Below, piece by piece: positions 7,401 through 58,100 of a DNA stretch of 64,000 nucleotides. Within the stretch, counting starts at the first letter, position 1; each line of letters opens with the position of its first letter. Under the pieces are notes generated by a model that was given only the letters and a program-made list of their open reading frames with translations, did not search any database and had not been told where the DNA came from. Origin of the DNA: Macrostomum lignano. Taxonomy: Eukaryota. The stretch spans positions 62,001 to 126,000 of the forward strand of contig NIVC01000435.1 of assembly GCA_002269645.1 (NCBI GenBank), in the 5' to 3' direction. A program made the translations under genes and the position numbers.

Positions 7401-9241
7401 TGTCTCACCATCATCAATCCAGTGTCTCACCATCATCCCAGTGTCTCACCATCATCATCCCAGTGTCTCACCATCATCCCAGTGTCTCACCTTCATCATC
7501 CCAGTGTCTCACCATCATCATCATTCCAGTGTCTCATCATCATCATCCCAATGTCTCATTATCATCACCCCAGTGTCTCACCATCATCATCCCAGTGTCT
7601 CACCATCATCATCCCAGTGTCTCACCATCATCATCCCAGTGTCTCACCATCATCATCCCAGTGTCTCACCATCATCATCCCAGTGTCTCACCTTCATCAC
7701 CCCAGTGTCTCACCTTCATCATCCCAGTGTCTCACCTTCATCATCCCAGTGTCTCACCATCATCATCCCAGTGTCTCACCATCATCAATCCAGTGTCTCA
7801 CCATCATCATCCCAGTGTCTCACCATCATCATCACAGTGTCTCACCATCATTATCATCCCAGTGTCTCACCATCATCATCCCAGTGTCTCACCATCATCA
7901 ATCCAGTGTCTCACCATCATCATCCCAGTGTCTCACCATCATCATCCCAGTGTCTCACCATCATCAATCCAGTGTCTCACCATCATCCCAGTGTCTCACC
8001 ATCATCATCCCAGTGTCTCACCATCATCAATCCAGTGTCTCACCATCATCCCAGTGTCTCACCATCATCATCCTAGTGTCTCACCATCATCCCAGTGTCT
8101 CACCATCATCATCCCAGTGTCTCACCATCATCATCCCAGTGTCTCACCATCATCAATCCAGTGTCTCACCATCATCATCCCAGTGTCTCACCATCATCAT
8201 CCCAGTGTCTCACCATCATCAATCCAGTGCCTCACCATCATCCCAGTGTCTCACCATCATCATCCCAGTGTCTCACCATCATCAATCCAGTGTCTCACCA
8301 TCATCCCAGTGTCTCACCATCATCATCCTAGTGTCTCACCATTATCCCAGTGTCTCACCATCATCATCCCAGTGTCTCACCATCATCAATCCAGTGTCTC
8401 ACCATCATCCCAGTGTCTCACCATCATCATCCCAGTGTCTCACCATCATCAATCCAGTGTCTCACCATCATCCCAGTGTCTCACCATCATCATCCCAGTG
8501 TCTCACCATCATCAATCCAGTGTCTCACCATCATCCCAGTGTCTCACCACCATCATCCCAGTGTCTCACCATCATCATCCCAGTGTCTCACCACCATCAT
8601 CCCAGTGTCTCACCATCATCATCCCAGTGTCTCACCATCATCAATCCAGTGTCTCACCATCATCCCAGTGTCTCACCACCATCATCCCAGTGTCTCACCA
8701 TCATCATCCCAGTGTCTCACCATCATCAATCCAGTGTCTCACCATCATCCCAGTGTCTCACCATCATCATCCCAGTGTCTCACCATCATCATCCTAGTGT
8801 CTCACCATTGTGCTACCTGTCTATTTATCTGAATACCCGTGTAATTTAATCCTAGCTTACACCTGCCTGACTACATTGCATAATTCCCCTTCCTGTTGTG
8901 CATCCAGACTTTCAGTGTATCCGCCTCATTACCACAGTTTCCCATCGCCCCTTCTTCATCTGCAGGTGATGCAGCGCAAGAACTACATCGGCGACTTTGA
9001 GGTCATTGACGATCACCGGTCCGGCAAAATCGTAGTAGAACTGAATGGCCGATTGAACAAGTGCAGCGTAGTCTCGCCTAGATACGATATCCACTTGAAA
9101 GATCTGGAAAAGTGGACCTCGGCTATTCTGCCATCGCGCCAGTTCGGCTTCATTGTGCTCACCACCTCCGGCGGCATCATGGACCACGAGGAGGCCAGGC
9201 GGAAGCATCTGGGCGGCAAAATCTTGGGCTACTTTTTCTAG
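4425..9241 (+). CDS. RPS15A: 40S ribosomal protein S15a (uS8), 130 aa; join(4425..4541,8966..9241)
   Basis: Exon 1 [39 protein letters not shown]|gtaaat. Exon 2 ctgcag|[33 protein letters not shown]...[18 protein letters not shown]. Phase-0 intron gives the canonical 130 aa. Confidence 0.97.
4590..8810 (+). repeat. ~4.2-kb minisatellite, ~20-24-bp unit (CCCAGTGTCTCA[C/T]CATCATCAT), filling the RPS15A intron
   Basis: About 200 units visible by eye. 5' variants (TCAT/TTCCAG) grade into 3' variants (TCAC/CCCAG). A block at ~6900 recurs at ~7530 (offset 630). Confidence 0.97.
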
Positions 9242-20325: not shown

Positions 20326-23300
20326 ATGAAGTATCCTATTGCAATACTTATCATATTTTGTGTTTGTCCAGAGTTTGGACATGCAAACAGAAGAGTGCTT
20401 TTATCAACTGTTCAGACTTTGACGCTTCACCGTGACAAATTTACTACTGGTCGACGAAGCAGTCCAATTCCACAGCTAAAATGCATTGATGGCAAAAGCA
20501 GCTGTTCAAATCTTCCATCTTCTGTTCAATGTTACAACCAAGGATCAGATGGAATTGATGTTCAGTGGAAGTGTGAAGCTCAGCTGCCTAAGAGCACCCA
20601 ATTTGATAAACTTCAGGTAGGCCTCTATCACCTGCATTCTGTAACAAATAAAAAAATTACATTTTACAATTGTAGAATATAGGCCTATTTCACAATTTTG
20701 TTTGAGCTTAATAAGGTGTAAGCCATGGTTCAAAATAAGTTTGAGTTAGTTGATTTAACATGACATACATTAAAAATAAAGCTAAATCTATACAAGATAC
20801 AAAAAGATAAAAAAGATGGCAATCCTTTAGTTTACAACCACTGTCTATTTTGTTAGTTTTGGTTTATGATCACCTTCTATTTTTCAAGTTTTGGTTTACG
20901 ATCACCTTATATTTTGCTTACTGCAGTGCAAAAATGGTGTGTTCAAAACTAAGATATAAAAACCAATGATAGTTTCAAATGAAAAGAAAACAAAAGTTGG
21001 CTGATCAACTAACTTTGTTTATTTGAAATTGAAAAGATTTGTACATCAGTTCACTAGTAGGGCCTAGCTTATATATATATATCACCTTTGGTTTACAATC
21101 ATCTAAAGCTGGCTATAGGAAAGCATGTCAACCCTAGCTTAGTATAATTAATCTTCAGCACCGCACCCCTTCACTTTTGGTTTACAATCACTTCCACACA
21201 TGCATTCCATTGAAATAATCATGAACCAAAGCTGGCTATAAGAAAGCATGTCAACCCTTAGTATACTTTCTTAAGGCCAGCTTTGGTTCACAATCATTTT
21301 AATGGGCAACATACATTTGGGTGATCATAAACCAAAGGTGAAATATATAGGCTACTGTAGTTCAAACTTGCAACTTGACAGTTGAAATTAGTTTGATAGG
21401 TTTTCCTACTGCCAGCTTCGGTTTGCAATCAATGGGTAACATACTTTTGGGTGATCGTAAACCAAAGGTTAAATATAAGGTGCTACAACTATCTTACCAT
21501 CTTTTGAAATAAACAAAGTCAGTTCGCCAATATTTGATTTTGTTTCATTGGAAACTATGGATTTTATGTCTTACAACTGTTTTTTGTGATAAACGTCACT
21601 GTTTGGGATGATTTTAAACCAAAGGAATGCCAAAAAGACAATGAATAGGTCTAGGCCTAGGTCTAAATGCTAAAGGATCAAAACAATAAGGCCTAGGCCT
21701 AGTGAAAAAGGGCAAAATCAAAAAAATTGGGGGCAAGTTTTTTGTAAACTTGTTTTTTAGCAATTTGAAAGCAATGAAGCTATAAAATAAATTTATTTGA
21801 GTTTTTAAAGGTTAGAAACATTTATAAAAGTTTAAATGTATTGACAAACATGTTTGCCAAACATGACAGGCTGATGCATTTGAATGTACTTAGAATTTGC
21901 CAAAACTCTGCTTCCTAATAAACAAATATCATTATTTCTTATTATTTCCAATTTACTACTTTGAGTATGCTTAATAGATTCTACTGTTTCTAGTTTAGTT
22001 TGCCTTAAATATAGAATATTTATGCTATAATAAATTTCTCGACATGTCAATAATATAAAGTGTATTGCCTTTTTATACAAGAATTGGTTCCAGAACTAAT
22101 CAGAAAGTGAAAAGTGCTCATTAGATCTTTTTAGACTTCAGTCTAAGAAATAGACTATAGAAGAAATAAACTACAAGCTTGTCTCTCCTCTCCCTTCTCT
22201 CCCTCCCTCTGGCCTTTGAGCTAAAAAAGTTTGCCAACCCCTGCTTTAACTCAATATAGGCAAGTGCATTCTGGAGTTGGTAAAGCAGGGTGCAGATGCT
22301 AATTAAGTGGGTCTGTTTGTACACATAGAAAACCAAAGCCGATTTTTGCAGCTTCAAAAAAACAAAAATCTTGTAATTTTTCATTTTTAAGGCAAAAACG
22401 CTGGTTATTCTACTGATAGAAAGTAGATAAAGACATTTATCTAGTTATTCTGGTATCTGTTTTTACTAAGCTGTTTAACCTTGTAATTTGAGTGTCATAC
22501 AATTGATTGATTCATATTTTAAAGGATACAATTTTTGGAATTGCAAAATTTCTATTAACTGTCAATTTTTTACTTCATGCTCAATTTTACCTTAAAAATT
22601 CAGGTTCAGTGCGAGGGCTATGACTATCCTGATGACCCCTACATCCTAGCCGGCTCGTGCGGCCTCACCTACTCGCTGAAGCCAGCCGGCGGCAGCCGCA
22701 GTCATAAAAGCCGGTCTGGTCATAAGAGTCGCAGTCATCGCCAAGCTGCTAGCGATTCGGACAAATCTGTCTCGCCAGTCATTGTGATTGCTGTTCTGGC
22801 CATTGCTGGCTATTGCATCTATGCATTCTTCTTAGCACCGTCCGCTAACCGCGTGTCCAACGACCCCAGCGCTCCGCCGCCGCCAGCTTATGACGATTAT
22901 AATGATGGCGACCAGCCTCCGCCTTATACTCCGGGCGGTCCAGGTGCGCCGCAATACGGATTCCGGCCTGAGTTCACTGCCGGCGCTGGTAGCAGTCCGG
23001 GAGGCTATGGAAAAGTGAGTCATTAGAATAGGAAAATTAGCTCTCAGTATCGATTTTTTATGATTACTGTTTTTTAGTTTCGATTTTTAGGTTTATCGAT
23101 TTTCCGTATCGATTTTTTAGGATTATTGATTTTCCGTATCGATTTTTTAGGATTATTGATTTTCAGTATCCATTAATTTCGGAATATTGATTTTCAGTAT
23201 CGATTAATTGAGGATTATTGATTTTCAGTATCCATTAATTTCGGAATATTGATTTTCAGTATCGATTAATTGAGGATTATTGATTTTTAGTATCGATTTA

Positions 23301-23728
23301 TTTGGGATTTTTGATTTCAGTTTTGATTTTTAGGGATTGTTGATTTTTCAGTATCGATAAATTGGGATTATTAATGGTGATCACTGATCCTGAGAGTTAT
23401 ACTCGATGATGACGCTATACTTAAAACTTCAAACGCACTCACTCAGGCTTACCAGCGTCGCGCCTATCAGCAGAATCAAGCTCAACCTGATGATAACAGC
23501 AGCAGCGGCCCGGGATTCTGGTCCGGAGCAGCCATTGGCGGCCTTGCCGGCTACCTGTTCGGCAACAGCAACAGTCAGAGAGCCGAGCCGTGCGGCTATT
23601 ACGGCAGCAGCGAGCCCTGCGGCGGTGGCGCGTCCTACTCTCGGCATTCGTCTACTTCTTCGTCTGCCTCATCTGTGGACACTGCGCCAACAACGGCTAC
23701 TGGCTACTCGTCTACCGGGAGACGATAG
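20326..23728 (+). CDS. SARAF: Store-operated calcium entry-associated regulatory factor (TMEM66), 327 aa; join(20326..20616,22604..23014,23447..23728)
   Basis: Signal peptide; VLLSTVQTLTLHRDKFTTGRRSSPIPQLKC; VQCYNQGSDGIDVQWKC; CEGYDYPDDPYILAGSCGL; a TM helix; PGFWSGAAIGGLAGYLFG; C-terminal TATGYSSTGRR. Both introns are phase 0, GT-AG. Confidence 0.95.
20818..21631. mobile_element. Degenerate ~800-bp foldback element in SARAF intron 1
   Basis: ~20970-21040 is the reverse complement of ~21490-21560. Repeated tggtttac/atgatcacc motifs on the left mirror ggtgatc(a/g)taaacca motifs on the right. Outer ends ggcaatccttt / aaaggaatgcc. Confidence 0.6.
23060..23370. repeat. ~30-bp degenerate minisatellite in SARAF intron 2
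   Basis: TTTCCGTATCGATTTTTTAGGATTATTGAT, period 30 (23101/23131). Confidence 0.85.
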
Positions 23729-25746: not shown

Positions 25747-28700
25747 TCACAGCTGTGCCACGGTCAGCATGCCGGTGAAGCAGACGGTTGCAGCGGTGAA
25801 GCCGCCCAGAGCCAGGTAGAGCACTCCAGCCGGGCCGACGCTTGGCGATATCAGCAGGTGGCCGGCCAGTGCTGGCAGCACCGAGACACCCAACTGGCTG
25901 CCGATGGTCCAGCTGCAGGCCAGAGGCCCGGTGACATCAAGCCGCTCCTCCAGCCAGGAGATGCCGCCGGCGTAGATGCTGGCGACGGCCAGGCCGAACG
26001 CCGCTGTGCTGGCGGACGTCAGCCAGGCTGGGGCGCCGGCGTCCAGCGAGAAGTCGCCAGCCAGGAGGCAGAGCGTTGCTAGGGAGATCTGCAGGTGAGT
26101 TCGAGAGCGAGGATTATGTTAGTAAATATTTTTACATTTTTACAGGTAATCAAGATACAGTTAAAAATGTGACTCTGACGGCGATGACATTGGAAAGTGA
26201 ACGACAATATCCAAACGCTACAATGAGAGTGAATGACAGTGTCCCTAAGCTTCGGGGAGTGAATGACAGTGTCCATTAAGCTTCAGGGAGTGAATGACAG
26301 TGTCCATTAAGCTTCAGGGAGTGAATGACAGTGTCCACTAAGCTTCAGGGAGTGAATGACAGTGTCCACTAAGCTTCAGGGAGTGAATGACAGTGTCCAC
26401 TAAGCTTCAGGGAGTGAATGACAGTGTCCACTAAGCTTCAGGCAGTGAGTGACAGTGTCCACTAAGCTTCAGGGAGTGAATGATAGTGTCCACTAAGCTT
26501 CAGGCAGTGGATGACAGTGTCCCTAGGCATCATAAAGTGAATGACAGTGTCCCTAAGTTTCAAGGAGTGAATGAGTGTCTCTAAGCTTCAGGGAGTGAAT
26601 GACAGTGTCCATTAAGCTTCAGGGAGTGTATGATAGTGTCCACTAAGCTTCAGGGAGTGAATGGCGATGGCAAACATGAGTTCATTAAGCGAGACTAGAA
26701 TCATAAAGCAATGCCGGTGCCCCAAGCGCCAGACAGCGGACATAAAAACCAATACTCCGACCTGGCAGGCGGCCAAATCCGCAAGCAGCAGAGTCGTAGG
26801 CCGCACGCACCGGGCCAGCGCCACGCCAAGGCAGCGGCCGGCCAGAAAGCCGCCAAAGAAGGCCGCATTCAGCGAAGTCAGGCGCAGCCGGCTGCACACT
26901 CCGTAGGCATTGATAAACGACCAAAACACGTTTTCAACTCCGACAAAGCAGAAATAGAAGGCGACAGTCAGGGCTACCAGGAGGCGGCGTCGCCAGAGCG
27001 GCAGCGACCCGGGCTTGCTAGCGACACTCGCTGGTAGTAGAACTTCCACTTCCACGACAGCTAATTTAGTCTTGATTGTCGCAGGCGGCACAAGTCGGTG
27101 TCGACAGGCTAGCAGTGCGAGAAAGCCCACAGCTGCCAGAGCTTGAGCAGCGTGCACCACAGCGAATGGTGCAAATATTGGTAGATGCAGAGTCGGCTGC
27201 GACCGACTGCTGACGCTGCTGGCAGTGCTGGATTGCGTGTAGTTCATCAGAGAGTCAACTGTTGAGTTAAATACAGCTTCCGGGTCTGATGATGGAGCTT
27301 GACAGAGGCTGAGACGAAGACTGTCCAGGGTTGAGTTAGCTGTGTCTTCGCTGACGGCAATGTTGTCGACGGGAAACGGTGGGCTTTCCGCCGCTGGCGG
27401 TTGCCAGTTGCGAAACTGGTGCAGCAGCGCCGGGGCGGAGAGGGCGCCCAAGGCCACGGCCAGGTGCAGAGACTGAAGCACCGGGCGGGAGTGCTGCGAG
27501 CCGAATAGCACGATGACCAGAATGCCGTCGGCTGCGGGTCGGTCACGTGACATTGGACCTAAGCTGTCAGGAGTTCAGAATTTATGTACTTTTGTCACAA
27601 CTCTCATACAGGGTGTGCATCGATTCTGACCTAGAAAAATTGTAATTGCTCTTGATTGGAGGCAGACCCAATGTTCTTCGTTTGATATGACTTAATTTGA
27701 ATGACGTGTGTGTAGGCAGGGACAACTAAAACTAGTTTAAGTTGTCCCTGGTGTGTAGGCTAAAAATTAATATAGAATCCCTATTTTCTAAACACATATC
27801 ATATATCAGTAATATCAATAGAGTATCATTAGAGCTATATAAGAAAGGCACAACATATCATACCCTTCCTGACCTTAAATATCCTAGCCTCCCTGACCTT
27901 AAATATCCTCACCCTCCCTGACCTTAAATATCATCACCCTCCCTGACCTTAAATATCCTCACCCTCCCTGACCTTAAATATCCTCACCCTAACTGACCTT
28001 AAATATCCTCACCCTAACTGACCTGAAAATCCTCCGATATAACTCTCCATTCAACCTTTAACCGAGTTCCATCTCACCAGTCTCAAGCGCGCTCTGGCCG
28101 GCGCCCAGCACCCCGGACAGCGTCAGCGATGTCCACAGACTCCGCGCCATCGGCAACGCCAGCAGAGCGGCAGCACAGATTAGATTTGCCGCCACTAAGA
28201 AGCCCAGCCTCTGCCTGGACTTTGGCAGCGAAGGAATGGCGAATCCGGTGACTATAGCGAGTAGGCAAGCGGCGGCCGATTTGACGGTGAACCAGAGACC
28301 CATGACGCGGAGACTGGCGCCGACTCGGCTGGCCAGGACCAGCAGGCAGCCGCCAGGCAGAGCGTTGGCCGCTCCGGTGGCGGCATGGGCGAGCCACATG
28401 AACAGCAGCGGCGCCCAGTGCCGGCGCAGCACCAATCGCATCTGGTTTTTTTTAATAAAAATATTTTCGCTAGTCTGTAAGAGTTCGTCTACTGACTAGT
28501 AGAATGTAAAGCGTTTGAAGAAAAAAATCTTGCAGTGATTTGCGCAGTTCTCAGCATATGGCTATATTTAATGCTTTACAATGCGCCAGCACCAAGGGGC
28601 GCCAGCACCAAGGGGCGCCAGCACCAAGGGGCGCCAGCACCAAGGGGCGCCAGCACCAAGGGGCGCCAGCACCAAGGGGCGCCAGCACCAAGGGGCGCCA

Positions 28701-31253
28701 GCACCAAGGGGCGCCAGCACCAAGGGGCGCCAGCACCAAGGGGCGCCAGCACCAAGGGGCGCCAGCACCAAGGGGCGCCAGCACCAAGGGGCGCCAGCAC
28801 CAAGGGGCGCCAGCACCAAGGGGCGCCAGCACCAAGGGGCGCCAGCACCAAGGGGCGCCAGCACCAAGGGGCGCCAGCACCAAGGGGCGCCAGCACCAAG
28901 GGGCGCCAGCACCAAGGGGCGCCAGCACCAAGGGGCGCCAGCACCAAGGGGCGCCAGCACCAAGGGCGCCAGCACCAAGGGGCGCCAGCACCAAGGGGCG
29001 CCAGCACCAAGGGGCGCCAGCACCAAGGGGCGCCAGCACCAAGGGGAGCCAGCACCAAGGGGCTTTAGCCATCAAAAAAATATAATTTTGCCAGACTATG
29101 TGGCGGGCCACAGCCCATCTTCCCCCTGGCCACGCCTCTAAAAGTGCGCATGCATGTACATGTACATTCACTCACGGGAACGGATTTGCCAGGCACTGCA
29201 GCGCAACCAGTGGAAGCTGCAGCCTCAATACGACTTAGATCAGCGGCAGTCTCTGGTGGATCAATAGATTTATCCAATAGGCAGTTCTCCCTGATGCTAA
29301 TCGAATAGTCCTTCTCTTGCTGTTCCGGCTGTTGCACTTCTTCTGTACTGCTTCTGCTGCTGCTGCTGCTGCTGCTACTAGAAGCCAGCAAGCCATACTC
29401 GACTGAATCTGCTGGTTCTGATGAATCTGGCAAAGAAATTGTTTTGGCTTTTTGGTTCGACTGGCTTGTCTGGTAGCTTGCTGTGTTCTAGATATTGTAG
29501 TAACGGAGACAGTTCCGCCTAGTAATTACCGAAACATTCCACCTGAGCAATTGAGACATTTTCCCTTAGCAACTGACATATTTGTCCCTTAGCAATTGAG
29601 ACATCTTCCCTTAGCAATTGATTCATCTTTTCCTTAGCAACTGAGACATTTTTCCCTTAGCAACTGAGACATTTTTCCCTTAGCAATTGAGACATTTTTC
29701 CCTTAGCAATTGAGACATTTGTCCCTTAGCAACTGACACATTTTTCCCTTACGATTGAGACATATTTCCCTTAGCAATTGATTCATCTTTTCCTTAGCAA
29801 CTGAGACATTTTTCCCTTAGCAACTGAGACATATTTCCCTTAGCAATTGATTCATCTTTTCCTTAGCAACTGAGACATTTTTCCCTTAGCAACTGAGACA
29901 TTTTTCCCTTAGCAATTGAGACATATTTCCCTTAGCAATTGATTCATCTTTTCCTTAGCAACTGAGACATTTTTCCCTTAGCAACTGAGACATTTTTCCC
30001 TTAGCAACTGAGACATTTTTCCCTTAGCAATTGAGACATATTTCCCTTAGCAATTGATTCATCTTTTCCTTAGCAACTGAGACATTTTTCCCTTAGCAAT
30101 TGAGACATTTTCCCTTAGCAACTGAGACATTTTTCCCTTACCAATTGATTCATATTTTCCTTAGCAACTGAGACATTTTCCCTTAGCAACTGGGAGACAT
30201 ATTTACCTAGCAATTGAGACATATTTCCCTTAGCAACTGAGACATATTTACCTAGCAACTGAGACACTATTCCCTTAGCAACAGAGACATTTTTCCCTTA
30301 GCAACAGAGACATTTTCCCTTAGCAACTGACACATTTTTCCCTTACGATTGAGACATATTTCCCTTAGCAATTGATTCATCTTTTTCTTACCAACTGAGA
30401 CATTTTTCCCTTAGCAACTGAGACATTTTCCCTTAGCAACAGAGACATTTTTCCCTTAGCAATTGAGACATTTTCCCTTAGCAACTGAGACATTTTTCCC
30501 TTAGCAACTGAGACATTTTTCCCTTAGCAACTGAGACATTTTCCCTTAGCAACTGAGACATTTTTCCCTTAGCAATTTAGACATATTTCCCTTTGCAATT
30601 GAGACATATTTCCCTTAGCAACTGAGACATATTTACCTAGCAACTGAGACACTTTTCCCTTAGCAACTGAGACACTTTTCCTTAGCAACAGAGACATTTT
30701 CCCTTAGCAACTGACACATTTTTCCCTTACGATTGAGACATATTTCCCTTAGCAATTGATTCATCTTTTTCTTACCAACTGAGACATTTTTTCCCTTAGC
30801 AACTGAGACATTTTCCCTTAGCAACTGAGACATTTTTCCCTTAGCAACTGAGACATTTTCCCTTAGCAACAGACATTTTCCCTTAGCAATTGAGACATAT
30901 TTCCCTTAGCAATTGATTCATATTTTCCTTACCAACTGAGACATTTTTCCCTTAGCAACTGAGACATATTTACCTAGCAACTGAGACACTATTCCCTTAG
31001 CAACTGAGACATTTTTCTTAGCAACTGAGACATTTTGCCTTAGCAACTGAGCATTTTCCCTTAGAAACTGAAACATTTCTTAGCAAATGAAGACATTACT
31101 CTACAAACCGAAATATTTTTGCTTTGACAACTTCCGTAAAAGGAGTTGGAACATGCTGATGCTACGCCTTCAAATATTCGAGTACATGTACTTTTATAAG
31201 AAGCAATATTATACCGATCATATTAAATCAATTAGAAATTTAATCTTACCCAT
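25747..31253 (-). CDS. MFSD4: MFS transporter, MFSD4/NaGLT1-like, ~576 aa; complement(join(25747..26088,26762..27531,28078..28441,29176..29426,31250..31253))
   Basis: Multiple TM helices. LETADGILVIVLFG...PVLQSLHLAVALGALSAP matches the MFSD4 pattern LDTGGNVL...GPYMQALHFSFALGAFLAP; YFCFVGVENVF and ASIYAGGISWLE also fit. Phases are consistent (1,0,1,0). The 4-nt first coding exon and the exon-4 acceptor (27531 vs 27558) are inferred. Confidence 0.8.
26228..26660. repeat. 31-bp minisatellite (AAGCTTCAGGGAGTGAATGACAGTGTCCACT) in MFSD4-like intron 4
   Basis: Period 31 (26341/26372). Confidence 0.95.
27870..28025. repeat. 25-bp minisatellite (CCCTCCCTGACCTTAAATATCCTCA) in intron 3
   Basis: Period 25 (27901/27926), ~6 copies. 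Confidence 0.9.
28583..29062. repeat. 17-bp GC-rich minisatellite (GCGCCAGCACCAAGGGG), ~28 copies, in intron 2
   Basis: Near-perfect period 17; stop-free, so it creates spurious ORFs in all six frames. Confidence 0.98.
29545..31080. repeat. ~23-bp minisatellite (TTCCCTTAGCAACTGAGACATTT) with variant sub-units, in intron 1
   Basis: ~1.5 kb. A variant GATTCATCTT unit recurs at intervals, giving higher-order structure. Confidence 0.95.
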
Positions 31254-41102: not shown

Positions 41103-42170
41103 AAAATGTGAACCCGGCATCCAAATCAGATGCTTACTGTATGCTCATTAAGCGACAAAGAACAATGAAATTACACTAAAACATGTATCATTGCGGCGTG
41201 TATGCAGGAAAAAAAGAATTTTCCAAATTGCTTAAGTAGAAGCTGAGTAAAATGCAATTTTCCAATCCTTATGGGAATTCCAATGTGTTACCCGGCTTCC
41301 AAATCAGATGCTTACTGTATGCTCATTAAGCGACGAAGAACAATGAAATTACACTAAAACATGTATTATTGCGGCGTGTATGCAGGAAAAAAAGAATTTT
41401 CCAAATTGCTTTAGTAGAAGCTGAGTAAAATGCAATTTTCCAATCCTTATGGGAATTCCAAGGTGTTACCCGGCTTCCAAATCAGATGCTTACTGTATGC
41501 TCATTAAGCGACAAAGAACAATGAAATTACACTAAAACATGTATTATTGCGGTGTATATGCAGGAAAAAAAGAATTTTCCAAATTGCTTTAGTAGAAGCT
41601 GAGTAAAATGCAATTTTCCAATCCTTATGGGAATTCCAATGTGTTACCCGGCTTCCAAATCAGATGCTTACTGTATGCTCATTAAGCAACGAAGAACAAT
41701 GAAATTACACTAAAACATGTATCATCGCAGCGTGTATGCAGGAAAAAAAGAATTTTCCAAATTGCTTTAGTAGAAGCTGAGTAAAATGCAATTTTCCAAT
41801 CCTTATGGGAATTCCAATGTGTTACCCGGTTTCCAAATCAGATGCTTACTGTATGCTCATTAAGCAACGAAGAACAATGAAATTACACTAAAACATGTAT
41901 CATCGCGGCGTGTATGCAGGAAAAAAAGAATTTTCCAAATTGCTTTAGTAGAAGCTGAGTAAAATGCAATTTTCCAATCCTTATGGGAATTCCAATGTGT
42001 TACCGGGTTTCCAAATCAGATGCTTACTGTATGCTCATTAAGCAACGAAGAACAATGAAATTACACTAAAACATGTATCATCGCGGCGTGTATGCAGGAA
42101 AAAAAGAATTTTCCAAATCGATTTAGTAGAAGCTGAGTAAAATGCAATTTTCCGATCCTTATGGGAATTT
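41103..42170. repeat. 178-bp satellite-like tandem repeat, 6 copies
   Basis: Anchors at 41113, 41291, 41469, 41647, 41825 and 42003 (period exactly 178); few substitutions. Confidence 0.97.
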
Positions 42171-46156: not shown

Positions 46157-49100
46157 ATGAGTGATGCAACACAGGATTCTACATTTGCCGCACTGCAATC
46201 GCCATTCCCTGCTGGTAAGAAAATATATAGCCAATGTCTTTGCTTTTGCCATTTTAATTAGTTTTAACTGCTAATTACTAACTGCTTAATTTATGTTTTA
46301 GCAGCAATTGGGACAAAAAGTGTAAAGAAGTTTGCCAATATTGCTCATGGTGCCGAGCCTGATGAGGTTTGTGATTTTTTTATCTAATGTTTTTCATATT
46401 CAATTTTAATGTTAGAAACAATTTGTTAAAATTTAGAAGCATTTTGCTTTTTTCTTGCAGAAAATGACCAAACTAGTGCAGGAGAATTTCGATTTACGTT
46501 TGCACTGCTATCATTTAAAAGAGAAACTGGATAAAGTCACCAATGGAGCGGATGTTTCTACTGATTTGGTTAGTTAGTTATTACTTGGTTTACCCAAATA
46601 AGTATGGCTTTATATATTAGAAACTTCATTCCAAAATGTTGTTTTTCAATCATCTTTGGCTCGAAATGTGCATCTTGCAGTTTACAAAACGAGCCTGTGA
46701 ACTGAATCTGTAAACTGTGCATCTACTCTGTCTATTTAGAATTTCACGTAGAGAGCCTCAATTCGATTGTTGTAATCTAATTTTTATTAGAAATTTCGTA
46801 ATGAGCCACACTAAACAGCGATTTCGACTCGCAGTATAGCGTAGGGAGCCTCAGGATTTTAATTTTATCAATTGCGAATTTAAATGTACAGACCCGCTTA
46901 GCCTACTTAGAATACCACGTAGAAAGCCTCTTGATTTTAATTTTATCGAATGTAAAATTAAATTTAGACTCGCGTCGCCTACTTAGAATCACGCTTAGAG
47001 AGCCTCCTAATATTAATTTTATCGATTTTAAATTCAAATTTAGACTCGCGTCGCCTACTTAGAATCACGCGTAGAGAGCCTGACTCGCGAACTAGAAGTT
47101 AAGCGACGCCTATTAACCGAAGGCTCCGAAGCGCTCAGCCAGTTAGACGAACAATTAAAATCTGCTCAAATCGAACGCGACGACGCCGAAGCTCGATGCG
47201 CCAAATTACGCGAGCAACTCGACAACGCCGTTTCTGCCAATGTCGTCGGCGGCACAAGCAGCTTACCTAATAACAACGATTCCAATGCCGCCGCGACAGC
47301 TCCGGGCGCTTCAACGTCGGCTGGCGGCGCGTCTTCGTCTACGAAATCTGGCGATTTGAATGAGCAGCGCATATTGAAGATGGCCGGTCTGTTGCAGGGC
47401 TCCTGGCGGAGGCAGGAGAAGCTCGAGTCTCGCCTAGCCAAGGCTGAGACAGAAGCGGCCAAACTCAAAGAACTGGAAGCCGCTGCGGAAGAGTGCGGTT
47501 TTGCCTTGGCCGAACTGCCCGATCGAGTGGCCGAGCTGAATAGGGAACTGGAGGCTGCGAATGCCTCGCTGGCTGATGCTGGCACCGTTATTGAGGTATA
47601 AGCTAGTGCTACTAAAGTGCTAGTGTGATTTTATTGGATCTGATGCTAAATGATATTGAATTTTTGTGATAACTCAGATGGCTGTTCGTGGGATGCTTAG
47701 CTTGAGATATTTCTAGAAATTCGATTTGTTCTTAAATCATAAATAGCTAAGATCTTTAGTATCTGGGATCTGATGCTCAAATGGGATTATCTACTATTTG
47801 GGATCTGATGCTCAAATGAGATTATCTACTATCTGAGATCTGATGCTCAAATGGGATCTACTATCTGAGATCTGATGCTCAAATGGGATTATCTACTATC
47901 CGAGATCTGATGCTCAAATGGGATTATCTACTATCCGAGATCTGATGCTCAAATGGGATTATCTACTATTTGGGATCTGATGCTCAAATGGGATTTCTCC
48001 TATCTGGGATCTGATGCTCAAATGGGATTTCTACTATCTGAGATCTGATGCTCAAATGGGATTTCTCCTATCTGAGATCTGATGCTCAAATGGGATCTAC
48101 TATCTGAGATCTGATGCTCAAATGGGATTATCAACTATTTGAGATCTGATGCTCAAATGGGATTATCTACTATCTGGGATCTGATGCTCAAATGGGATTT
48201 CTACTATCTGAGATCTGATGCTCAAATGGGATTTCTCCTATCTGAGATCTGATGCTCAAATGGGATCTACTATCTGAGATCTGATGCTCAAATGGGATTA
48301 TCAACTATTTGAGATCTGATGCTCAAATGGGATTATCTACTATCTGGGATCTGATGCTCAAATGGGATTATCTACTATTTGGGATCTGATGCTCAAATGG
48401 GATTATCTACTATCTGAGATCTGATGCTCAAATGAGATTATCTACTATCTGAGATCTGATGCTCAAATGGGATTATCAACTATTTGGGATCTGATGCTCA
48501 AATGGGATTTCTCCTATCTGGGATCTGATGCTCAAATGAGATTATCTACTATCTGAGATCTGATGCTCAAATGGGATTATCAACTATTTGGGATCTGATG
48601 CTCAAATGGGATTTTCTCCTATCTGGGATCTGATGCTCAAATGAGATTATCTACTATCTGAGATCTGATGCTCAAATGGGATTATCAACTATTTGGGATC
48701 TGATGCTCAAAAGGGATTTCTCCTATCTGGGATCTGATGCTCAAATGTGATTATCAACTATTTGGGATCTGATGCTCAAATGGGATTATCAACTATTTGG
48801 GATCTGATGCTCAAATGGGATTTCTCCTATCTGGGATCTGATGCTCAAATGTGATTATCAACTATTTGGGATCTGATGCTCAAATGGGATTATCAACTAT
48901 TTGGGATCTGATGCTCAAATGGGATTTCTCCTATTTGGGATCTGATGCTCAAATGGGATTTTCTCCTATCTGGGATCTGATGCTCAAGTTCAAAAATTTC
49001 TTTGGATAAATCCTCCGATGAGAACTCTTGCATTGTTATTCTGACTTAGTGCTATGCATCATATTAATCACTCTGTTATCCTTCCTCATTGCACAGAATC

Positions 49101-52100: not shown

Positions 52101-55100
52101 CGACCGGCTGCTCGGTCAGCTGCGCGGCGCCGAGGCCGGTCTCCAGGCCGCTCTGTCCACTACGCTAGGCAATGTGTCCGCTCTGCTAGGCTCGGCTACC
52201 GCTTTCGCTAACAATACTACTATGAACAATACTAATCATAGGATGTCTTCAATTCGACCCTGCGGCGCTAATCAGGAAGACGATTCGTTTGCTCTGGGTA
52301 ACAACCAGTACAATCGCGACGTGTCTCTGCTATCTGCCCAGCTGATGCAGCCGCCTGGTACGCCCGGCCTACGCTCGATGGAAGAAGAGAACGCGTTGGC
52401 TATGCGCAATCTGCAGGATCACGTGGCCGAGGTTAAACAGGCGCTCACTGGCTTTGGAAGGATTGGCTGCATGCTCGAAGCGCTGCTGGCTGGGGCTGGT
52501 GGGTACAAATTTGAGTAAAATTCTTATTTATTGTCTAATAAATGCCTCAATCTCCTCACAATCTGCTTCACCTGAGCCTTAACTCCTTTAACTAACTAAA
52601 TGTCCTTCTAACATCCCAAATCTCATTTCTTTAATCTTTTAGTCCCTTCTCAGAATCCCTAATCCCAAGTGACTTCAATTATTCCAAAATCTCCTCCCCG
52701 TATTCAAAGATCTCTTTCCTCTAATCCCAAGTCCTTTAATCTAATCCTAAAGTCACCCACTCTAATCCCCAACTTTCCTTCCCCGCTAATAGGGAATGTT
52801 TCTTAGTTTTAATAATTCTGGCCCTTTTCAAAACCAGCCTCCCCGCTGCATCAATCGATTTCCTGATCCTATTTCCTTACACAGTTGCCGAGGCATCCAA
52901 CTGCAGCTTCAATCTAGACGATCAGCAGCAAGCATCGGCTAGCGAGCATCATCTGTCCCAGCCTCATCAACAGCAGCAGCAGCAGCATCAACGCCATAAC
53001 CGCCATCAGCATCATCACCTGCTAGACACCGACGCCGACGAATGGGCCACGCCGCCGTCGCCTCCGCCAACGACAACGGCGCCCAAGCCACCGCAGCCAC
53101 CTGGCGTATCGGTGACTTCCACCTTGACAGACGTGACCACCTGTCCTGGCAGCAGTTTAATGACTGGCGAAGTCGCTGAAGGTACCGCCAACGCCGCCTC
53201 TGCCTCCACCGCTGCTGACGCTGAAACCGAAGCAGAAGCGGCCACTAATTCGCCTCCAAGCCTTCGTCTAGACGATCTGATGCACCTAGCGAAAAAGCCG
53301 CCCGGCCCGTCCGCGTCGTTGTCCATTTCAACATCGCGTTCGTCGGCTGAGTCCTCGACTAGGGCTGTTGCTGTTGAAGCCCAGACCGACTGCCATTACG
53401 ATGAACAAGCGATGGCTGCTAGGTAGGTTTTAATAAGGCAACTGTGCCAACAGCACAGATGCATGTAACTTTGTGGCACAATTGGCAGAGTTTAGTGTGC
53501 TAAATCGAGTGTCCTTTTCCTTTTGCCCCAGATGCCGCACCCTGGAAGCCATTTGGCGCAAACGATCTTCAAGTGTCCTTTCCCATTTGCCTCAGATGCC
53601 GCACCCTGGAAGCCATTTGGCGCAAACGACCTTCAAGTGTCCTTTCCCTTTTGCCCCAGATGCCGCACCCTGGAAGCCATTTGGCGCAAACGACCTTCAG
53701 GTGTCCTTTCCCATTTGCCCCAGATGCCGCACCCTGGAAGCCATTTGGCGCAAACGACCTTCAGGTGTCCTTTCCCATTTGCCCCAGATGCCGCACCCTG
53801 GAAGCCATTTGGCGCAAACGACCTTCAGGTGTCCTTTCCCATTTGCCCCAGATGCCGCACCCTGGAAGCCATTTGGCGCAAACGACCTTCAGGTGTCCTT
53901 TCCCTTTTGCCCCAGATGCTGCACCCTGGAAGCCATTTGGCGTAAACGACCTTCAAGTGTCCTTTCCCTTTTGCCCCAGATGCCGCACCCTGGAAGCCGA
54001 ACTGGCCGCCGCTATAAGCCGAGCCGATCACCTCCAATCGGAGCTGTCAGCCGCTCTAGCCGACACCGAGCAGGCCCAGGATGAAGCCAAGAATCTGGCC
54101 GCCAATTGTGATCAGCTGCGCGATCAGATGGCCGAATTAGCCGAGGAGGGCGCCGAGCTCAAGGCCAAGTTGGCTTTGGCTAGTCAAACTGCCGATTCAA
54201 AATCCGACGACTCGGTTTATAAAGAATTCGAAGCCGCTCTAGTTGAGAAATCTGCTCAGTTAGCCGGACTAGAGGCTGAGCTGGAGTTCACCAAGGCTGC
54301 TCAGTTGGATTCTGAGAAAAGGGAGGCCGAATTGAATGCTCTACTGGAGTCGGTTAGAGCTGAGTTGGAACCTGCTGCAGCACAGTTGAGTGAGAAAGCT
54401 GCTGAGTTGGATGCCGCAAAGGCTGAATTAGAATCTTCAATTTCCAAACTCGAACTTGTCGAAGCTAATCTAGCTGAGAAGTCTACTCGGCTTGAGTCCG
54501 CCGAGTCTGAGCTCGAATTGGCTAAATCCAATATCGAACAGTTGGAAACCGATCTAGTTGAGACTGCGAATCAACTCGAAACCGCCGAGTCTGAGCTGGA
54601 ATCCGCTAAGTCCAATATCGAACAGCTCGAAGTTAACCTTAACGAAAAAGCTACTCAACTTGAGTCCACTGAAACCGAATTGAAATCGGCTAAATCAAAT
54701 CTTGAACAGATGGAAGCTGAAATAGTTGACAAAACTTCTCAACTTGAGCAAGCTGAATCCGAATTAGAATCAGCTAAATCCGGTATGGAACAGTTGAAAT
54801 CCGAACTCGTTGACAAGACTGCTGAACTCGAGTCCGCCGAGTTGCAGTTGAATTCCGCTAAATCCAGCATTGAACAGTTCGAAACTAGCCTAATTGAGAA
54901 GACTGCTCAACTAGAGACAGCAGAATCCGAGCTAGAATCGCTCAAGGCCACCGTCGATAAATTAGAAGCCGAGTTAGTTGATAAACAGACTCAGCTTGAG
55001 TCGGCCGAGTCTGAGCTGCAGTTGGCCAATTCGAATGTCGAACAGTTGGAAGCCAACCTAGTTGAGAAGGCTGCTCAGTTTGAGTCTTCCAGATCTGAGC

Positions 55101-58100
55101 TGCAGTCGGCTAAGTCAAATATCGAACAATTAGAAGCTGAACTGGCTGCTAAGACTGCTCAACTTGAGACTGCCGAATCTGAGTTAGAGTCCGCCAAAGC
55201 TAATTATGAACAGTTGGACTCGAACATGATTGAGAAGACTGCTCAACTTGAGTCGGTCGAGTCCGAGTTGAAGTTGGCTAAATCCAATATTAAACAGCTT
55301 GAAGCAAATCTGCTAAAGAAGACTGTTCAGCTGAAATCCACCGAGGCTGAGCTGAGCGAATTGCGCGAACAGTACGGCGTTGCACAGGTACTGGCAGATA
55401 GATTTTGCACTGCAGTAGCGAGATGTAGCCTCTTCTATAAATAGTGCATAGATATTGTCCTACAGTCAATAAGATATTGTCCTACAGTAGATGTTGTCCT
55501 ACAGTAGATAGATATTGTCCTACAGTAGATAGGTATTGTCCTACAGTAGATAAATATTTTCTACGGTAGATAGATATTATCCTACAGTAGATAGGTATTG
55601 TCCTACAGTAGATATTGTCCTACAGTAGATAGATATTGTCCTACAGTAGATAGATATTGTCCTACAGTAGATAGATATTGTCCTACAGTAGATAGATATT
55701 GTCCTACAGTAGATAGATATTGTCCTACAGTAGATAAATATTGTCCTACAGTAGATATTGTCCTACAGTAGATAGATATTGTCCTACAGTAGATAGATAT
55801 TGTCCTACAGTAGATAGATATTGTCCTACAGTAGATAGATATTGTCCTACAGTAGATAAATATTGTCCTACAGTAGATATTGTCCTACAGTAGATAGATA
55901 TTGTCCTACAGTAGATAGATATTGTCCTACAGTAGATAGATATTGTCCTACAGTAGATAGATATTGTCCTACAGTAGATAAATATTTTCTACGGTTGATA
56001 GATATTGTCCTACGACATATACACATGTCTAACGAGCAGATAGATACTATCCTGCAGTAGAAACGCATACACAGTAGCCAGTACAGCACGTAGACACGTA
56101 CTCTGGTAAGCATTCAGCCAGCGTGTAACGCCCTTACCCTCCGCTCGCACCCGCAGCAGGACCAGGAGCATCAGAAGCGTCAAAGTCACGCCGCCGAGAT
56201 GGCCGAAGTGCTGACCAGCTATCGCGAGCTCACTAGCAAGTGCGAGCGGGCCGTCAGCCTCAGCGTGGAGCTGCAGAACCGGGCAGAGGAGCTGCGGGCC
56301 AAGCTGAACTCGCGGACTAAGTGAGTTAATATGCGTGTCTTGGAATTGGTTGCTCTGGGTCCTTTCACATCTTTAGTTTCTGGGCCATTCTCCCAGATCC
56401 TCAGTTGCTGGGCTGCCAGCCTCCCAGATCCTCAGTCTCTGGGCCAGCCTCCCAAATCCTCAGTTGCTGAGCCAGCCTCCCAAATCCTCAGTTGCTGGGC
56501 CAGCCTCCCAGATCCTCAGTTGCTGAGCCAGCCTCCCAGATCCTCAGTTGCTGAGCCAGCCTCCCACATCCTCGGTTGCTGAGCCAGCCTCCCAGATCCT
56601 CAGTTGCTGAGCCAGCCTCCCAGATCCTCAGTTGCTGAGCCAGCCTCCCAGATCCTCAGTTGCTGATCCATTCTCCCAGATCCTCAGTTGCTGAGCCAGC
56701 CTCCCAGATCCTCAGTTGTTGAGCCAGCCTCCCACATCCTCGGTTGCTGAGCCATTCTCCCAGATCCTCAGTCGCTGGGCCAGCCTCCCAAATCCTCAGT
56801 TGCTTGGCCATTTTCCCTGATCCTCAGTTGCTGGGCCACAGCCACCGTTCCAGACCTTCAGATTTTAGAATGCTGATTTGAATTTGTAATGAAATGGAAC
56901 ACACTAATAAAACTCTTTTACTCAAAAATCTATAATAACCCACCGACAGGCGACTTGAATCCGTTCAGAAGTCCAACAGTCAGTTGAAGGCTATGTTAAA
57001 GAAAAGTGACGACACCTGCAATCAGCTGAGTCTGGAGCTCAAAGCGTAAGTGTATAACATTTGTTAAATATTTAAGTTATTTTTCTTAGAAACAGCTTTT
57101 CTTAGAATCAAGTCTCATAATGCGTCATCCCTATTTTGTTTCCCAGCACCAAGCTTGAAATCGAGGACAAGACGGCCCTGACGGAGAAGCTTCTGCGCTA
57201 CATCTCTCGTCTAGGCGCACCGCATCCCGCCGGCACCGGCGCCGCCGCCAACGCCGCCGCAGGCGCCGATTTCGACCCCGACGAGCTCGAAGGTTCATTG
57301 TCGACCAACGCGTCGTCTTCATCGACTTCAACTGCCACGGGCGCCAGCAGTTCCGGCACTCCCCTAGAAGCGGCCAGAGCTTGCAGTCCGAGTCCTGCCG
57401 TCTGCGGCGATTCCGCCTCCGCCGCTGCCGCTGCCGCCGCTGCCGCTGCTTGGCCCGAGGTGATCCAGGCCGAGATCACGCTGCACGATGCCCTGGCCCG
57501 CGTGTCCAACTGCGGCGCGATTGGCGGCCTGAGCGCCTCGGCCAATGCCAACACCGGATGCGGCGACGGGGGGCCATTAGCTTTGGCGCGCGAATTGCGA
57601 CGCGCACTACGCGATCTGCGCCATCTACGCTCGCGCCTATCGCAATCCTTGGCCGAATCGCGTCGCTTAGCTGGCCAGCTGGCCAACGTTGACGGTCGAG
57701 CGGACGAATTGGCCAGTCTGCGTCGGACGGCCGACGAGCTGCGCAAAGAGAATAACGAGCTCAAAGCTGTTGCTAAGGACAACAACAATTCTAGTGAGCA
57801 GTTTGTCTTATGTTGCTTGTTGTAGGTAGAATTTGTCATTGTCGTAGCGGTAAACCGCCTCATTATTCTTGTTTAACAATCATTCCTCGAAGAGTAGAAA
57901 ATGGCGATACAAACTTTGATAATCACCCCATGAAATTACCTTCAATCCTTCAGAAATCGCCTTACGAATCTTAAAAATCGCCCTGGGAAATCGCTTCACC
58001 AATTTTAAGAATCGCCTTAGGAAATCGCTCTACCAACATGAGAATCGCCCTGGGGAATCGCTCTACTAGCATAAGAATCGCCCTAAGAAATCGCTCTAAG

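What the first reader, a model, noticed from the sequence alone, without database searches (positions are those of the whole stretch)
53500..54084. Eight tandem copies of a 3' splice site create a frame-switching acceptor ladder
Seen: the 64-bp unit is a pyrimidine tract, CAG and the first 19 nt of exon 9. After the phase-2 donor at 53422, every copy gives R-CRTLEA. Since 64 mod 3 = 1 and the array has no sense-strand stops, acceptors 53596, 53788 and 53980 are in frame (+128, +64 and 0 aa). The other five shift frame; the first (53532) ends at a stop at 54084 and would remove the whole 28-aa-repeat rod. Each unit also has a donor-like CA(G/A)|GTGTCC 41 nt after the AG. Known: tandem duplication of AG/GT-containing segments is a proposed route to intron gain. 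Inference: a young VNTR whose copy number could tune isoform length or NMD, or an intron-gain event in progress.
Basis: partly seen in the sequence, partly recalled or inferred. Interest (0 to 1): 0.8.

Follow-up and report, generated by a model that had tools for sequence, protein, structure and literature searches.

The report
Intronic minisatellite repeating a splice acceptor
A 64-base tandem repeat in a flatworm (Macrostomum lignano) gene has copied the end of an intron and the first 19 bases of the next exon eight times; this is most likely a harmless by-product of an extremely repeat-rich genome, not a regulatory device.

Summary
TRF finds a 64-bp array at 53508-53998: 7.7 copies, 96% matches, no indels. 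It consists of eight 43-nt cores (24 nt of pyrimidine tract plus CAG, then 19 nt of exon) separated by seven 21-nt spacers.

The context lowers its significance:
- The window is Macrostomum lignano, and tandem arrays cover 30% of it and 45% of this gene.
- The host is a centrosomin-like (CM1 motif) coiled-coil gene.
- An older 76-bp array (46839-47081) in the same gene has the same layout, so the architecture recurs and is tolerated.
- Being stop-free has about a 10% chance expectation.
- The internal donors (GTGTCC) are weak.
- The array duplicates an existing acceptor rather than an exonic AGGT, so it lengthens an intron (109 to 557 nt) and does not create one.

The closest known cases are human boundary-spanning minisatellites that reiterate donor sites (F7 IVS7, IFI6, CBS, LMNB2, PDGF). 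In those, the exon-adjacent site is used exclusively or mainly.

Acceptor usage, copy-number polymorphism and assembly accuracy could not be tested. No transcript, orthologue or second assembly was reachable. My verdict is a passenger minisatellite and the acceptor-side mirror of a known kind, of moderate-to-low interest.

The parts
52740..53422 (+). Upstream exon. The frame is open from 52740 and the true 5' end was not determined. It ends ...GCT GCT AG at 53422 (phase 2).
   Evidence: Open-frame map and translation.
53423..53428 (+). 5' splice site GTAGGT (TAG|GTAGGT).
   Evidence: Sequence. The in-frame stop TAG at 53424-26 follows immediately, as expected at a real exon end.
53423..53507 (+). 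Unique 5' part of the intron (85 nt). It holds the only near-consensus branch-site candidate, GCTAAAT at 53499-53505, which lies outside the repeat unit.
   Evidence: Sequence. Branch-site assignment is inference. The region has no similarity to the spacer.
53508..53955 (+). Seven upstream 64-bp units (core plus spacer). Each carries a pseudo-acceptor CAG|, with first exon nucleotides at 53532, 53596, 53660, 53724, 53788, 53852 and 53916. Each is followed 41 nt later by a donor-like CA(A/G)|GTGTCC.
53956..53998 (+). Eighth 43-nt core: pyrimidine tract, CAG (53977-53979) and the first 19 nt of the rod exon. This is the only copy contiguous with the rest of the exon, so it is the productive acceptor.
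   Evidence: Its core is identical to that of copy 3.
53943..53945 (+). TAA created by a private C>T change in copy 7. It terminates products of acceptors 53660 and 53852.
54082..54084 (+). TGA that terminates products of acceptors 53532, 53724 and 53916. It lies about 1.3 kb upstream of the next exon junction.
53980..55387 (+).
   Evidence: Pfam gives generic coiled-coil hits only.
54470..55354 (+). 84-bp (28-aa) coding repeats within the rod exon: 10.5 copies, 67% matches.
46461..46568 (+). Exon with the centrosomin CM1 motif (MTKLVQENFDLRLHCYHLKEKL...), donor TTG|GTTAGT. It identifies the host gene as centrosomin/CDK5RAP2-like.
   Evidence: Pfam PF07989 Cnn_1N, E 1.3e-6, 28.9 bits against a cutoff of 28.5. 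Sequence.
46839..47081 (+). Second, older acceptor-reiterating array in the same gene: 76-bp unit, 3.2 copies, 82% matches. Acceptors have first exon nucleotides at 46892, 46968 and 47044, and only 47044 is in frame.

Best explanation
**What it is.** This is an intronic minisatellite in Macrostomum lignano. It began as a tandem duplication of a 43-bp segment that straddles the 3' splice site of an intron in a centrosomin-like (CM1) coiled-coil gene. That segment is 24 nt of pyrimidine tract plus CAG, followed by the first 19 nt of the exon. The duplication carried 21 nt of filler DNA at its junction. The 64-bp unit was then amplified by slippage or unequal exchange to eight cores, most recently in the middle of the array.

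**Why it can persist.** A tandem duplication across a splice junction always leaves one intact junction next to the exon, so it repairs itself. Here the last copy (exon start 53980) gives the normal mRNA. The seven upstream copies are intronised pseudo-acceptors, and the intron has grown from 109 to 557 nt.

**What the pseudo-acceptors would do.** If used, five of the seven would give prematurely terminated, probably NMD-sensitive, transcripts. The other two would insert 64 or 128 residues of unstructured-looking peptide.

**Commitment.** I take the array to be a passenger of this genome's very high rate of minisatellite birth, not a regulatory device. Shown here: the anatomy, the frames, the recurrence in the same gene and the genomic context. 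Inferred: the order of events, use of the last acceptor and neutrality.
For: - Array anatomy and chance controls.
- Eight cores but only seven spacers, and the spacer has no significant match to either flank or elsewhere in the window. This fits duplication with filler followed by amplification.
- Edge copies 1, 3 and 8 share the same variants, and central copies 4-6 are identical.
- Only the last acceptor leaves the protein unchanged. Two upstream in-frame acceptors (53596, 53788) would insert 128 or 64 residues, and no other in-phase AG has a pyrimidine tract.
- The period is not a multiple of 3, and stop-freeness is expected by chance about 10% of the time, so the array is not coding.
- The organism is M. 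lignano: SARAF in the window is 99% identical to the UniRef M. lignano entry. Simple and tandem repeats make up 15% of that genome (PMC5730564). Arrays cover 30% of this window and 45% of this gene, and one fills almost a whole neighbouring intron.
- A second array in the same gene (76 bp, 82% matches) has the same acceptor-plus-exon-start layout, while the downstream exons remain open. Such ladders are therefore tolerated for a long time.
- In human donor-side analogues, the exon-adjacent site is used exclusively or mainly (PMC1557585).
Against: - There is no transcript evidence of any kind. The gene has no hit in the protein collection, so the exon junction itself is a prediction.
- All eight acceptors are equally strong: 15-16 of 17 pyrimidines, stronger than the two SARAF acceptors placed by protein mapping.
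- The only near-consensus branch site, GCTAAAT, lies upstream of copy 1 and outside the unit. The first acceptor would also define a compact 109-nt intron. On intron-definition or first-come-first-served reasoning, the first acceptor should compete well, which would make the array deleterious rather than neutral.
- Early globin experiments with duplicated splice sites gave contradictory results (PMC1557585).
- Copy number in the assembly could not be checked.
Confidence: 0.62

Rival explanations
1. The array is a splicing lesion. The upstream acceptors, especially the first at 53532 with its 109-nt intron and native branch site, capture much of the splicing. This gene copy would then be a hypomorph or a young pseudogene, producing mostly frame-shifted, NMD-targeted mRNA. 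It would be tolerated because M. lignano carries redundant duplicated gene copies.
For: - The acceptors are identical and strong.
- The branch-site candidate GCTAAAT lies only upstream of copy 1.
- Five of the seven upstream acceptors give premature stops more than 1.3 kb before the next junction.
- The array is young, so downstream decay would not yet be visible.
Against: - The older 76-bp ladder in the same gene has persisted to about 18% divergence while all downstream exons stay open.
- Each unit offers possible branch points (TTCAA, CAAAC) at -24 to -36.
- In human donor-side arrays the exon-adjacent site is used exclusively or mainly.
Confidence: 0.22
2. This is the reader's model: a functional ladder. 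Copy number, or regulated choice among the eight acceptors, would tune protein length (+64 or +128 aa) or expression through NMD. Alternatively, the AG...GT units would be nascent introns.
For: The frame arithmetic is correct, and two upstream acceptors are in frame and stop-free. The sense strand of the consensus unit has no stop.
Against: - Stop-freeness has about 10% chance expectation.
- A period of 64 is not a multiple of 3.
- The inserted peptide has no recognisable feature.
- The donor-like GTGTCC is weak, and a 41-nt mini-exon would shift the frame.
- The duplication spans an existing acceptor, so no new intron position arises.
- The same layout occurs as a decaying array elsewhere in the gene, which is what a neutral by-product looks like.
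- RNA folding shows no special structure (z = -0.38).
Confidence: 0.05
3. This is a two-gene, operon-like reading. The upstream ORF would end at TAG 53424-26, and the rod would be a separate downstream cistron. The reiterated acceptors would then be spliced-leader trans-splice sites. Their multiplicity would only vary the 5' UTR and would not shift any frame.
For: - The stop codon directly follows the putative donor.
- An AATAAG lies at 53432-37, and the first acceptor is 105 nt after the stop.
- 38.8% of M. lignano genes are trans-spliced, and almost 7% of assembled transcripts carry several trans-splice sites (PMC5730564).
Against: - A good donor (AG|GTAGGT) sits exactly at the ORF end, in a phase compatible with the rod frame.
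- CM1 proteins are typically long coiled-coil proteins (background knowledge).
- The rod frame has no ATG near the acceptors; its first in-frame ATG lies about 140 nt into the exon (read).
- AATAAG is not the canonical poly(A) signal.
Confidence: 0.07
4. This is an assembly artefact. The copy number, or the array itself, would have been mis-built in a repeat-rich long-read assembly.
For: The M. lignano genome is difficult to assemble because of simple repeats (PMC5730564). Copies 4-6 are identical.
Against: - The array is only 491 bp and well within read length.
- Its phasing is perfect, with 0% indels.
- The copies carry distinct, structured variants.
- Dozens of similar arrays lie nearby.
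Confidence: 0.04

Closest known systems
Human boundary-spanning intronic minisatellites that reiterate a 5' splice site: F7 IVS7 37-bp VNTR (5-9 copies), IFI6 (6-16) intron 2, CBS IVS13, LMNB2 and PDGF intron 4 (Borensztajn et al. 2006, PMC1557585)
   Same: - A minisatellite whose terminal monomer spans an exon/intron boundary, so the authentic splice site is accompanied by several pseudo-sites of identical sequence inside the intron.
- The unit length is not constrained to multiples of 3.
- The exon-contiguous copy gives the normal mRNA.
   Different: - Those arrays reiterate the donor, with the first monomer spanning the boundary. Here the acceptor is reiterated, with the last monomer spanning it, so each unit must also supply a pyrimidine tract and a branch point.
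- Usage and polymorphism are documented for the human cases and unknown here.
- The unit here contains 21 nt of filler that is not derived from either flank.
Intron gain by tandem duplication of an exonic AGGT proto-splice site (Rogers model; Hellsten et al. 2011, PMC3265369; Lehmann et al. 2010, PMC2891723; potato RdRp case, PMC4974935)
   Same: Tandem duplication supplies duplicate splice signals, exon-derived sequence becomes intronic, and NMD is invoked to buffer mis-spliced forms.
   Different: - In that model the duplication lies within an exon, and a new intron is created between the GT of copy 1 and the AG of copy 2.
- Here an existing intron's 3' end is duplicated, no new intron position arises, and the internal GT sites are weak and derive from intron sequence.
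Ordinary intronic minisatellites/VNTRs of the M. lignano genome (Wudarski et al. 2017, PMC5730564)
   Same: Unit size, high copy identity and intronic location all match. Twenty-six arrays of at least 150 bp lie in this 64-kb window.
   Different: Most arrays stop short of the splice sites. For example, the 21-bp array in the next intron starts 8 nt after the donor. This one, and the 76-bp array at 46839-47081, include the acceptor and the exon start.
NAGNAG / closely spaced tandem acceptors
   Same: Several AGs compete for one donor.
   Different: Those sites are 3 to about 18 nt apart and share one branch point and tract, and the outcome is a change of one or a few codons. Here the spacing is 64 nt and each site has its own full set of signals.

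Membership tests
Minisatellite / VNTR | Head-to-tail tandem copies of a 10-100 bp unit | tested here: met
   TRF gives period 64, 7.7 copies, 96% matches and 0% indels. Register shown.
Minisatellite / VNTR | Copy number varies between individuals or alleles | not testable with these tools
   No second assembly, reads or related locus were reachable.
Boundary-spanning minisatellite that reiterates a splice site (F7 IVS7 type) | The terminal monomer spans an exon/intron boundary | tested here: met
   The last core (53956-53998) holds the CAG and the first 19 nt of the exon. The boundary itself is predicted, not shown by RNA.
Boundary-spanning minisatellite that reiterates a splice site (F7 IVS7 type) | [quoted passage not shown] | tested here: met
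   The cores differ from copy 8 by 0-2 of 43 nt. All eight keep CAG and 15-16 of 17 pyrimidines.
Boundary-spanning minisatellite that reiterates a splice site (F7 IVS7 type) | The reiterated site is the 5' splice site (donor) | tested here: not met
   The reiterated site here is the 3' splice site, which makes this a mirror-image variant.
Boundary-spanning minisatellite that reiterates a splice site (F7 IVS7 type) | Only, or mainly, the exon-adjacent site is used | not testable with these tools
   No transcript data are available.
Intron gain by tandem duplication (Rogers model) | The duplicated segment is exonic and contains an AGGT proto-splice site, and the new intron runs from the GT of copy 1 to the AG of copy 2 | tested here: not met
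   The unit spans a pre-existing acceptor. Its GT (GTGTCC) lies in intron-derived sequence and is a weak donor. AG to GT is 41 nt and GT to the next AG is 23 nt, too short for an intron.
Protein-coding tandem repeat | Period is a multiple of 3 and the frame is conserved across copies | tested here: not met
   64 mod 3 = 1. The stop-free sense strand has about 10% chance expectation. The true coding repeat next door has period 84.
Centrosomin / CDK5RAP2 family (host gene) | N-terminal CM1 motif | tested here: met
   PF07989 Cnn_1N, E 1.3e-6, 28.9 bits against a gathering score of 28.5. This is a narrow pass.
Centrosomin / CDK5RAP2 family (host gene) | Long coiled-coil body, a C-terminal CM2 motif and orthology to known members | tested here: inconclusive
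   Coiled-coil exons are present. No homologue was found in two searches. CM2 was not examined.

The most novel reading that the evidence does not exclude
In Macrostomum lignano, tandem duplication seeded at 3' splice junctions may be a recurrent route by which introns lengthen; two of the roughly ten arrays in this one gene show it. The resulting ladders of identical acceptors may not be silent. Leakage to out-of-frame copies would then make the output of each gene copy depend on array length through NMD. That would act as a fast-mutating dosage dial in a hidden polyploid. It would also offer a natural system for learning how a spliceosome chooses among identical 3' splice sites.
Probability: 0.12. 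Interest if true: 0.6.

Novelty: new member of a known kind. Interest (0 to 1): 0.3.

Why it matters
As it stands this is an annotation caution. Gene predictors and RNA-seq aligners will struggle with eight identical acceptors, and the gene is indeed missing from the protein collections searched.

If followed up, the locus and its older twin at 46839-47081 would be a natural acceptor-side counterpart to the human F7 IVS7 model. Eight identical 3' splice sites, only the first of which has the native upstream context, ask directly whether proximity to the donor, the branch point, or contiguity with the exon decides the choice.

It also illustrates how introns can grow by intronising duplicated exon starts.

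Tried and rejected
**Searches that found nothing**
- Orthologue or transcript comparison. Two protein searches, one with the junction plus rod and one with 1049 aa of non-repetitive exons, gave no relative.
- An exact look-up of a neighbouring single-exon protein found no contig.
- An exact-match scan of metagenome contigs for the core found nothing.
- As a result, the ancestral state, polymorphism and splicing could not be examined.

**Origin of the 21-nt spacer**
- There is no significant alignment to the intron flank or the exon flank (1789/5000 and 4133/5000 shuffles scored as well).
- The only other match in the window is a 12-mer at 33928, with 0.18 expected by chance.
- I therefore rejected the idea that the spacer is a diverged copy of the flanks, and kept 'filler'.

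**Ideas tested and rejected**
- Coding array: rejected on period and on the 10% chance of stop-freeness.
- RNA structure masking the upstream acceptors: no signal (z = -0.38).
- Known RNA family: no Rfam hit anywhere in the window.
- The bacterial promoter/terminator scan is irrelevant for a eukaryote and was empty.

**Other checks**
- Other arrays of the gene do not reach a splice site, although one starts 8 nt after a donor.
- A literature search for an acceptor-side boundary minisatellite returned only the F7 donor-side paper.

**Not run, as they would not bear on the question**
- The exhaustive HMMER search and structure prediction.
Full report
**What is there**

TRF reports a single array at 53508-53998 with period 64, 7.7 copies, 96% matches, no indels and score 891. 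Written in register, it is eight copies of a 43-nt core separated by seven copies of a 21-nt spacer.
- The core is (A/G)GTGTCCTTTCCC(A/T)TTTGCCCCAG|ATGCCGCACCCTGGAAGCC.
- The spacer is ATTTGGCGCAAACGACCTTCA.
- The pyrimidine tract occurs 8 times and the spacer 7 times in the window, nowhere else, against 0 expected in dinucleotide shuffles.

The upstream open frame ends ...GCT GCT AG|GTAGGT at 53422 in phase 2. The last core runs without interruption into a 1408-nt coiled-coil exon (53980-55387, donor CAG|GTACTG). That exon contains the 84-bp (28-aa) repeats at 54470-55354.

Joining 53422 to each acceptor gives R-CRTLEA, with these outcomes:
- 53596, 53788 and 53980 are in frame, adding +128, +64 and 0 aa.
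- 53532, 53724 and 53916 stop at TGA 54082-84.
- 53660 and 53852 stop at TAA 53943-45.

That TAA comes from a private C>T change in copy 7, so the array is not quite stop-free. Copy 7 also reads CCTLEA. The donor-like site is CAA|GTGTCC three times and CAG|GTGTCC four times, 41 nt after the AG.

**Organism and host gene**

A SARAF gene in the window (20326-23725) is 99% identical to the UniRef Macrostomum lignano protein. The DNA is therefore M. lignano or a very close relative.

The host gene carries a centrosomin CM1 motif at 46461-46568: Pfam Cnn_1N, E 1.3e-6, just above the gathering score. A string of coiled-coil and low-complexity exons follows to about 58.8 kb. It has no detectable relative in the protein collection. 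No orthologue, transcript-derived protein or second allele could be brought to bear.

**Genomic context**

The window is saturated with minisatellites.
- There are 42 merged arrays covering 19.4 kb, which is 30% of the window and 45% of the gene's span.
- Published figures for the species are 15% simple and tandem repeats, mean introns of 1.1-1.4 kb and extensive duplicated blocks (PMC5730564).
- The neighbouring intron is almost entirely a 21-bp array. Its decayed copies start 8 nt after the donor.

**A second instance in the same gene**

The 76-bp array at 46839-47081 (3.2 copies, 82% matches) consists of the last ~38 nt of the intron that follows the CM1 exon plus the first ~38 nt of the next exon.
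- Its acceptors have first exon nucleotides at 46892, 46968 and 47044.
- 76 mod 3 is also 1, and only 47044 is in frame. The others terminate after 44-56 codons.
- More decayed copies lie further upstream.

The architecture is therefore recurrent. It has persisted long enough to diverge by about 18% while every downstream exon stayed open.

**Origin**

Eight cores with seven spacers, rather than a whole number of 64-bp units, point to a particular history. The spacer shows no significant similarity to either flank or to anything else in the window. This fits an initial duplication of the 43-bp junction segment with 21 nt of filler, followed by amplification.

The variant pattern agrees with that history. 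Edge copies 1, 3 and 8 share A at unit position 1 and T at position 14; copy 8's core is identical to copy 3's and differs from copy 1's by one base. Central copies 4-6 are identical over all 64 nt. The ancestral intron would have been 109 nt, and it is now 557 nt.

**Is it coding, or an intron being born?**

It is neither.
- The period is not a multiple of three.
- A circular 64-mer with no stop on one strand occurs in 10-11% of shuffles and of random 64-mers from the window.
- The duplicated segment straddles an existing acceptor, not an exonic AGGT, so the Rogers/Hellsten route to a new intron (PMC3265369, PMC2891723) does not apply.
- GTGTCC lacks the +4 to +6 consensus. From that GT to the next AG the interval is only 23 nt, and a 41-nt mini-exon would itself shift the frame.

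**Which acceptor is used?**

This cannot be settled here.

*For the last copy:*
- It is the only one that leaves the protein unchanged.
- Among the in-phase AGs that run stop-free into the rod, only 53596, 53788 and 53980 have a pyrimidine tract.
- The older ladder has been tolerated.
- In the human donor-side arrays the exon-adjacent site is used exclusively or predominantly (PMC1557585).

*Against:*
- All eight sites are equally strong at 15-16 of 17 pyrimidines. The two SARAF acceptors placed by protein mapping have 10-11 of 17.
- The only near-consensus branch site (GCTAAAT, 53499-53505) lies upstream of copy 1 and outside the unit.
- The first acceptor defines a compact 109-nt intron.
- Copies 2-8 would have to use TTCAA or CAAAC in the spacer, at -24 to -36.
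- No RNA structure distinguishes the copies (z = -0.38).

I therefore give about 0.6 to the passenger reading and about 0.2 to a hypomorphic lesion tolerated through gene redundancy. The regulated ladder, an operon-like trans-splicing layout and an assembly artefact each get small weights. The trans-splicing layout rests on the stop TAG at 53424-26, an AATAAG at 53432-37 and a first acceptor 105 nt after the stop.

**Comparison with what is known**

The closest known systems are minisatellites whose first monomer spans an exon-intron boundary and reiterates the donor. The examples are human F7 IVS7 (37 bp, 5-9 copies), IFI6, CBS, LMNB2 and PDGF (PMC1557585). This locus is the acceptor-side mirror of those.

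I found no described acceptor-side minisatellite in the searchable library, but that search is narrow. From background knowledge, small duplications of intron-exon junctions are known as human mutations. I file this as a new member of a known kind.

**Verdict**

The feature is real and the arithmetic is correct. It is most likely an ordinary by-product of a genome that makes minisatellites at a very high rate. Its value is as a caution for annotation and as a possible natural model for 3' splice-site choice. Interest: 0.3.

Noticed in passing
window 46839-47081 (with decayed copies back to about 46719): A 76-bp array reiterates the acceptor and the first ~38 nt of the exon after the CM1 exon. 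Acceptors fall at 46892, 46968 and 47044, and only the last is in frame. This is an older twin of the finding in the same gene.
   Followed up: yes
window 46461-46568: This exon encodes a centrosomin CM1 motif (Pfam Cnn_1N, a narrow pass). The host is therefore a centrosomin/CDK5RAP2-like gene. It has no detectable relative among 5.8 billion proteins, although SARAF from the same window is present at 99% identity.
   Followed up: partly
window 55396-56061: A 21-bp array (TRF 55448-56013), together with decayed flanking copies, fills almost the whole intron after the rod exon. It starts 8 nt after the donor GT at 55388.
   Followed up: partly
window 26227-26663 and ORF 26612-27553 (-): A minus-strand ORF runs about 1.6 units into a 31-bp, 14-copy array and takes its stop codon there. 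Either the C-terminus and 3' end come from the repeat, or an unrecognised donor lies at the array edge.
   Followed up: no
window 4589-8808: A 4.2-kb array of a 22-bp unit (193 copies) lies immediately upstream of the last exon of an RPS15a gene (Ribosomal_S8 domain within ORF 8810-9241). It creates long spurious ORFs in several frames.
   Followed up: no
window 41105-42169: A 178-bp unit is repeated 6 times at 97% identity in an AT-rich intergenic stretch. It is satellite-like and is the longest unit in the window.
   Followed up: no
window 53424-53531: The upstream ORF stops at TAG right after the donor. An AATAAG follows at 53432-37, and the first acceptor lies 105 nt after the stop. The layout also resembles an intercistronic region with a spliced-leader trans-splice site.
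   Followed up: partly
window 20326-23725: The three-exon SARAF gene was mapped from the UniRef M. lignano protein. Exon identities are 100%, 97.9% and 94.7%, which suggests a different allele, line or homeologue. Its second intron is mostly a 31-bp array (23044-23372).
   Followed up: partly
window 28583-29063: A 16-bp unit is repeated 30 times at 99% identity. It is open in several frames on both strands and lies next to exons of a minus-strand gene with hydrophobic, membrane-protein-like ORFs.
   Followed up: no
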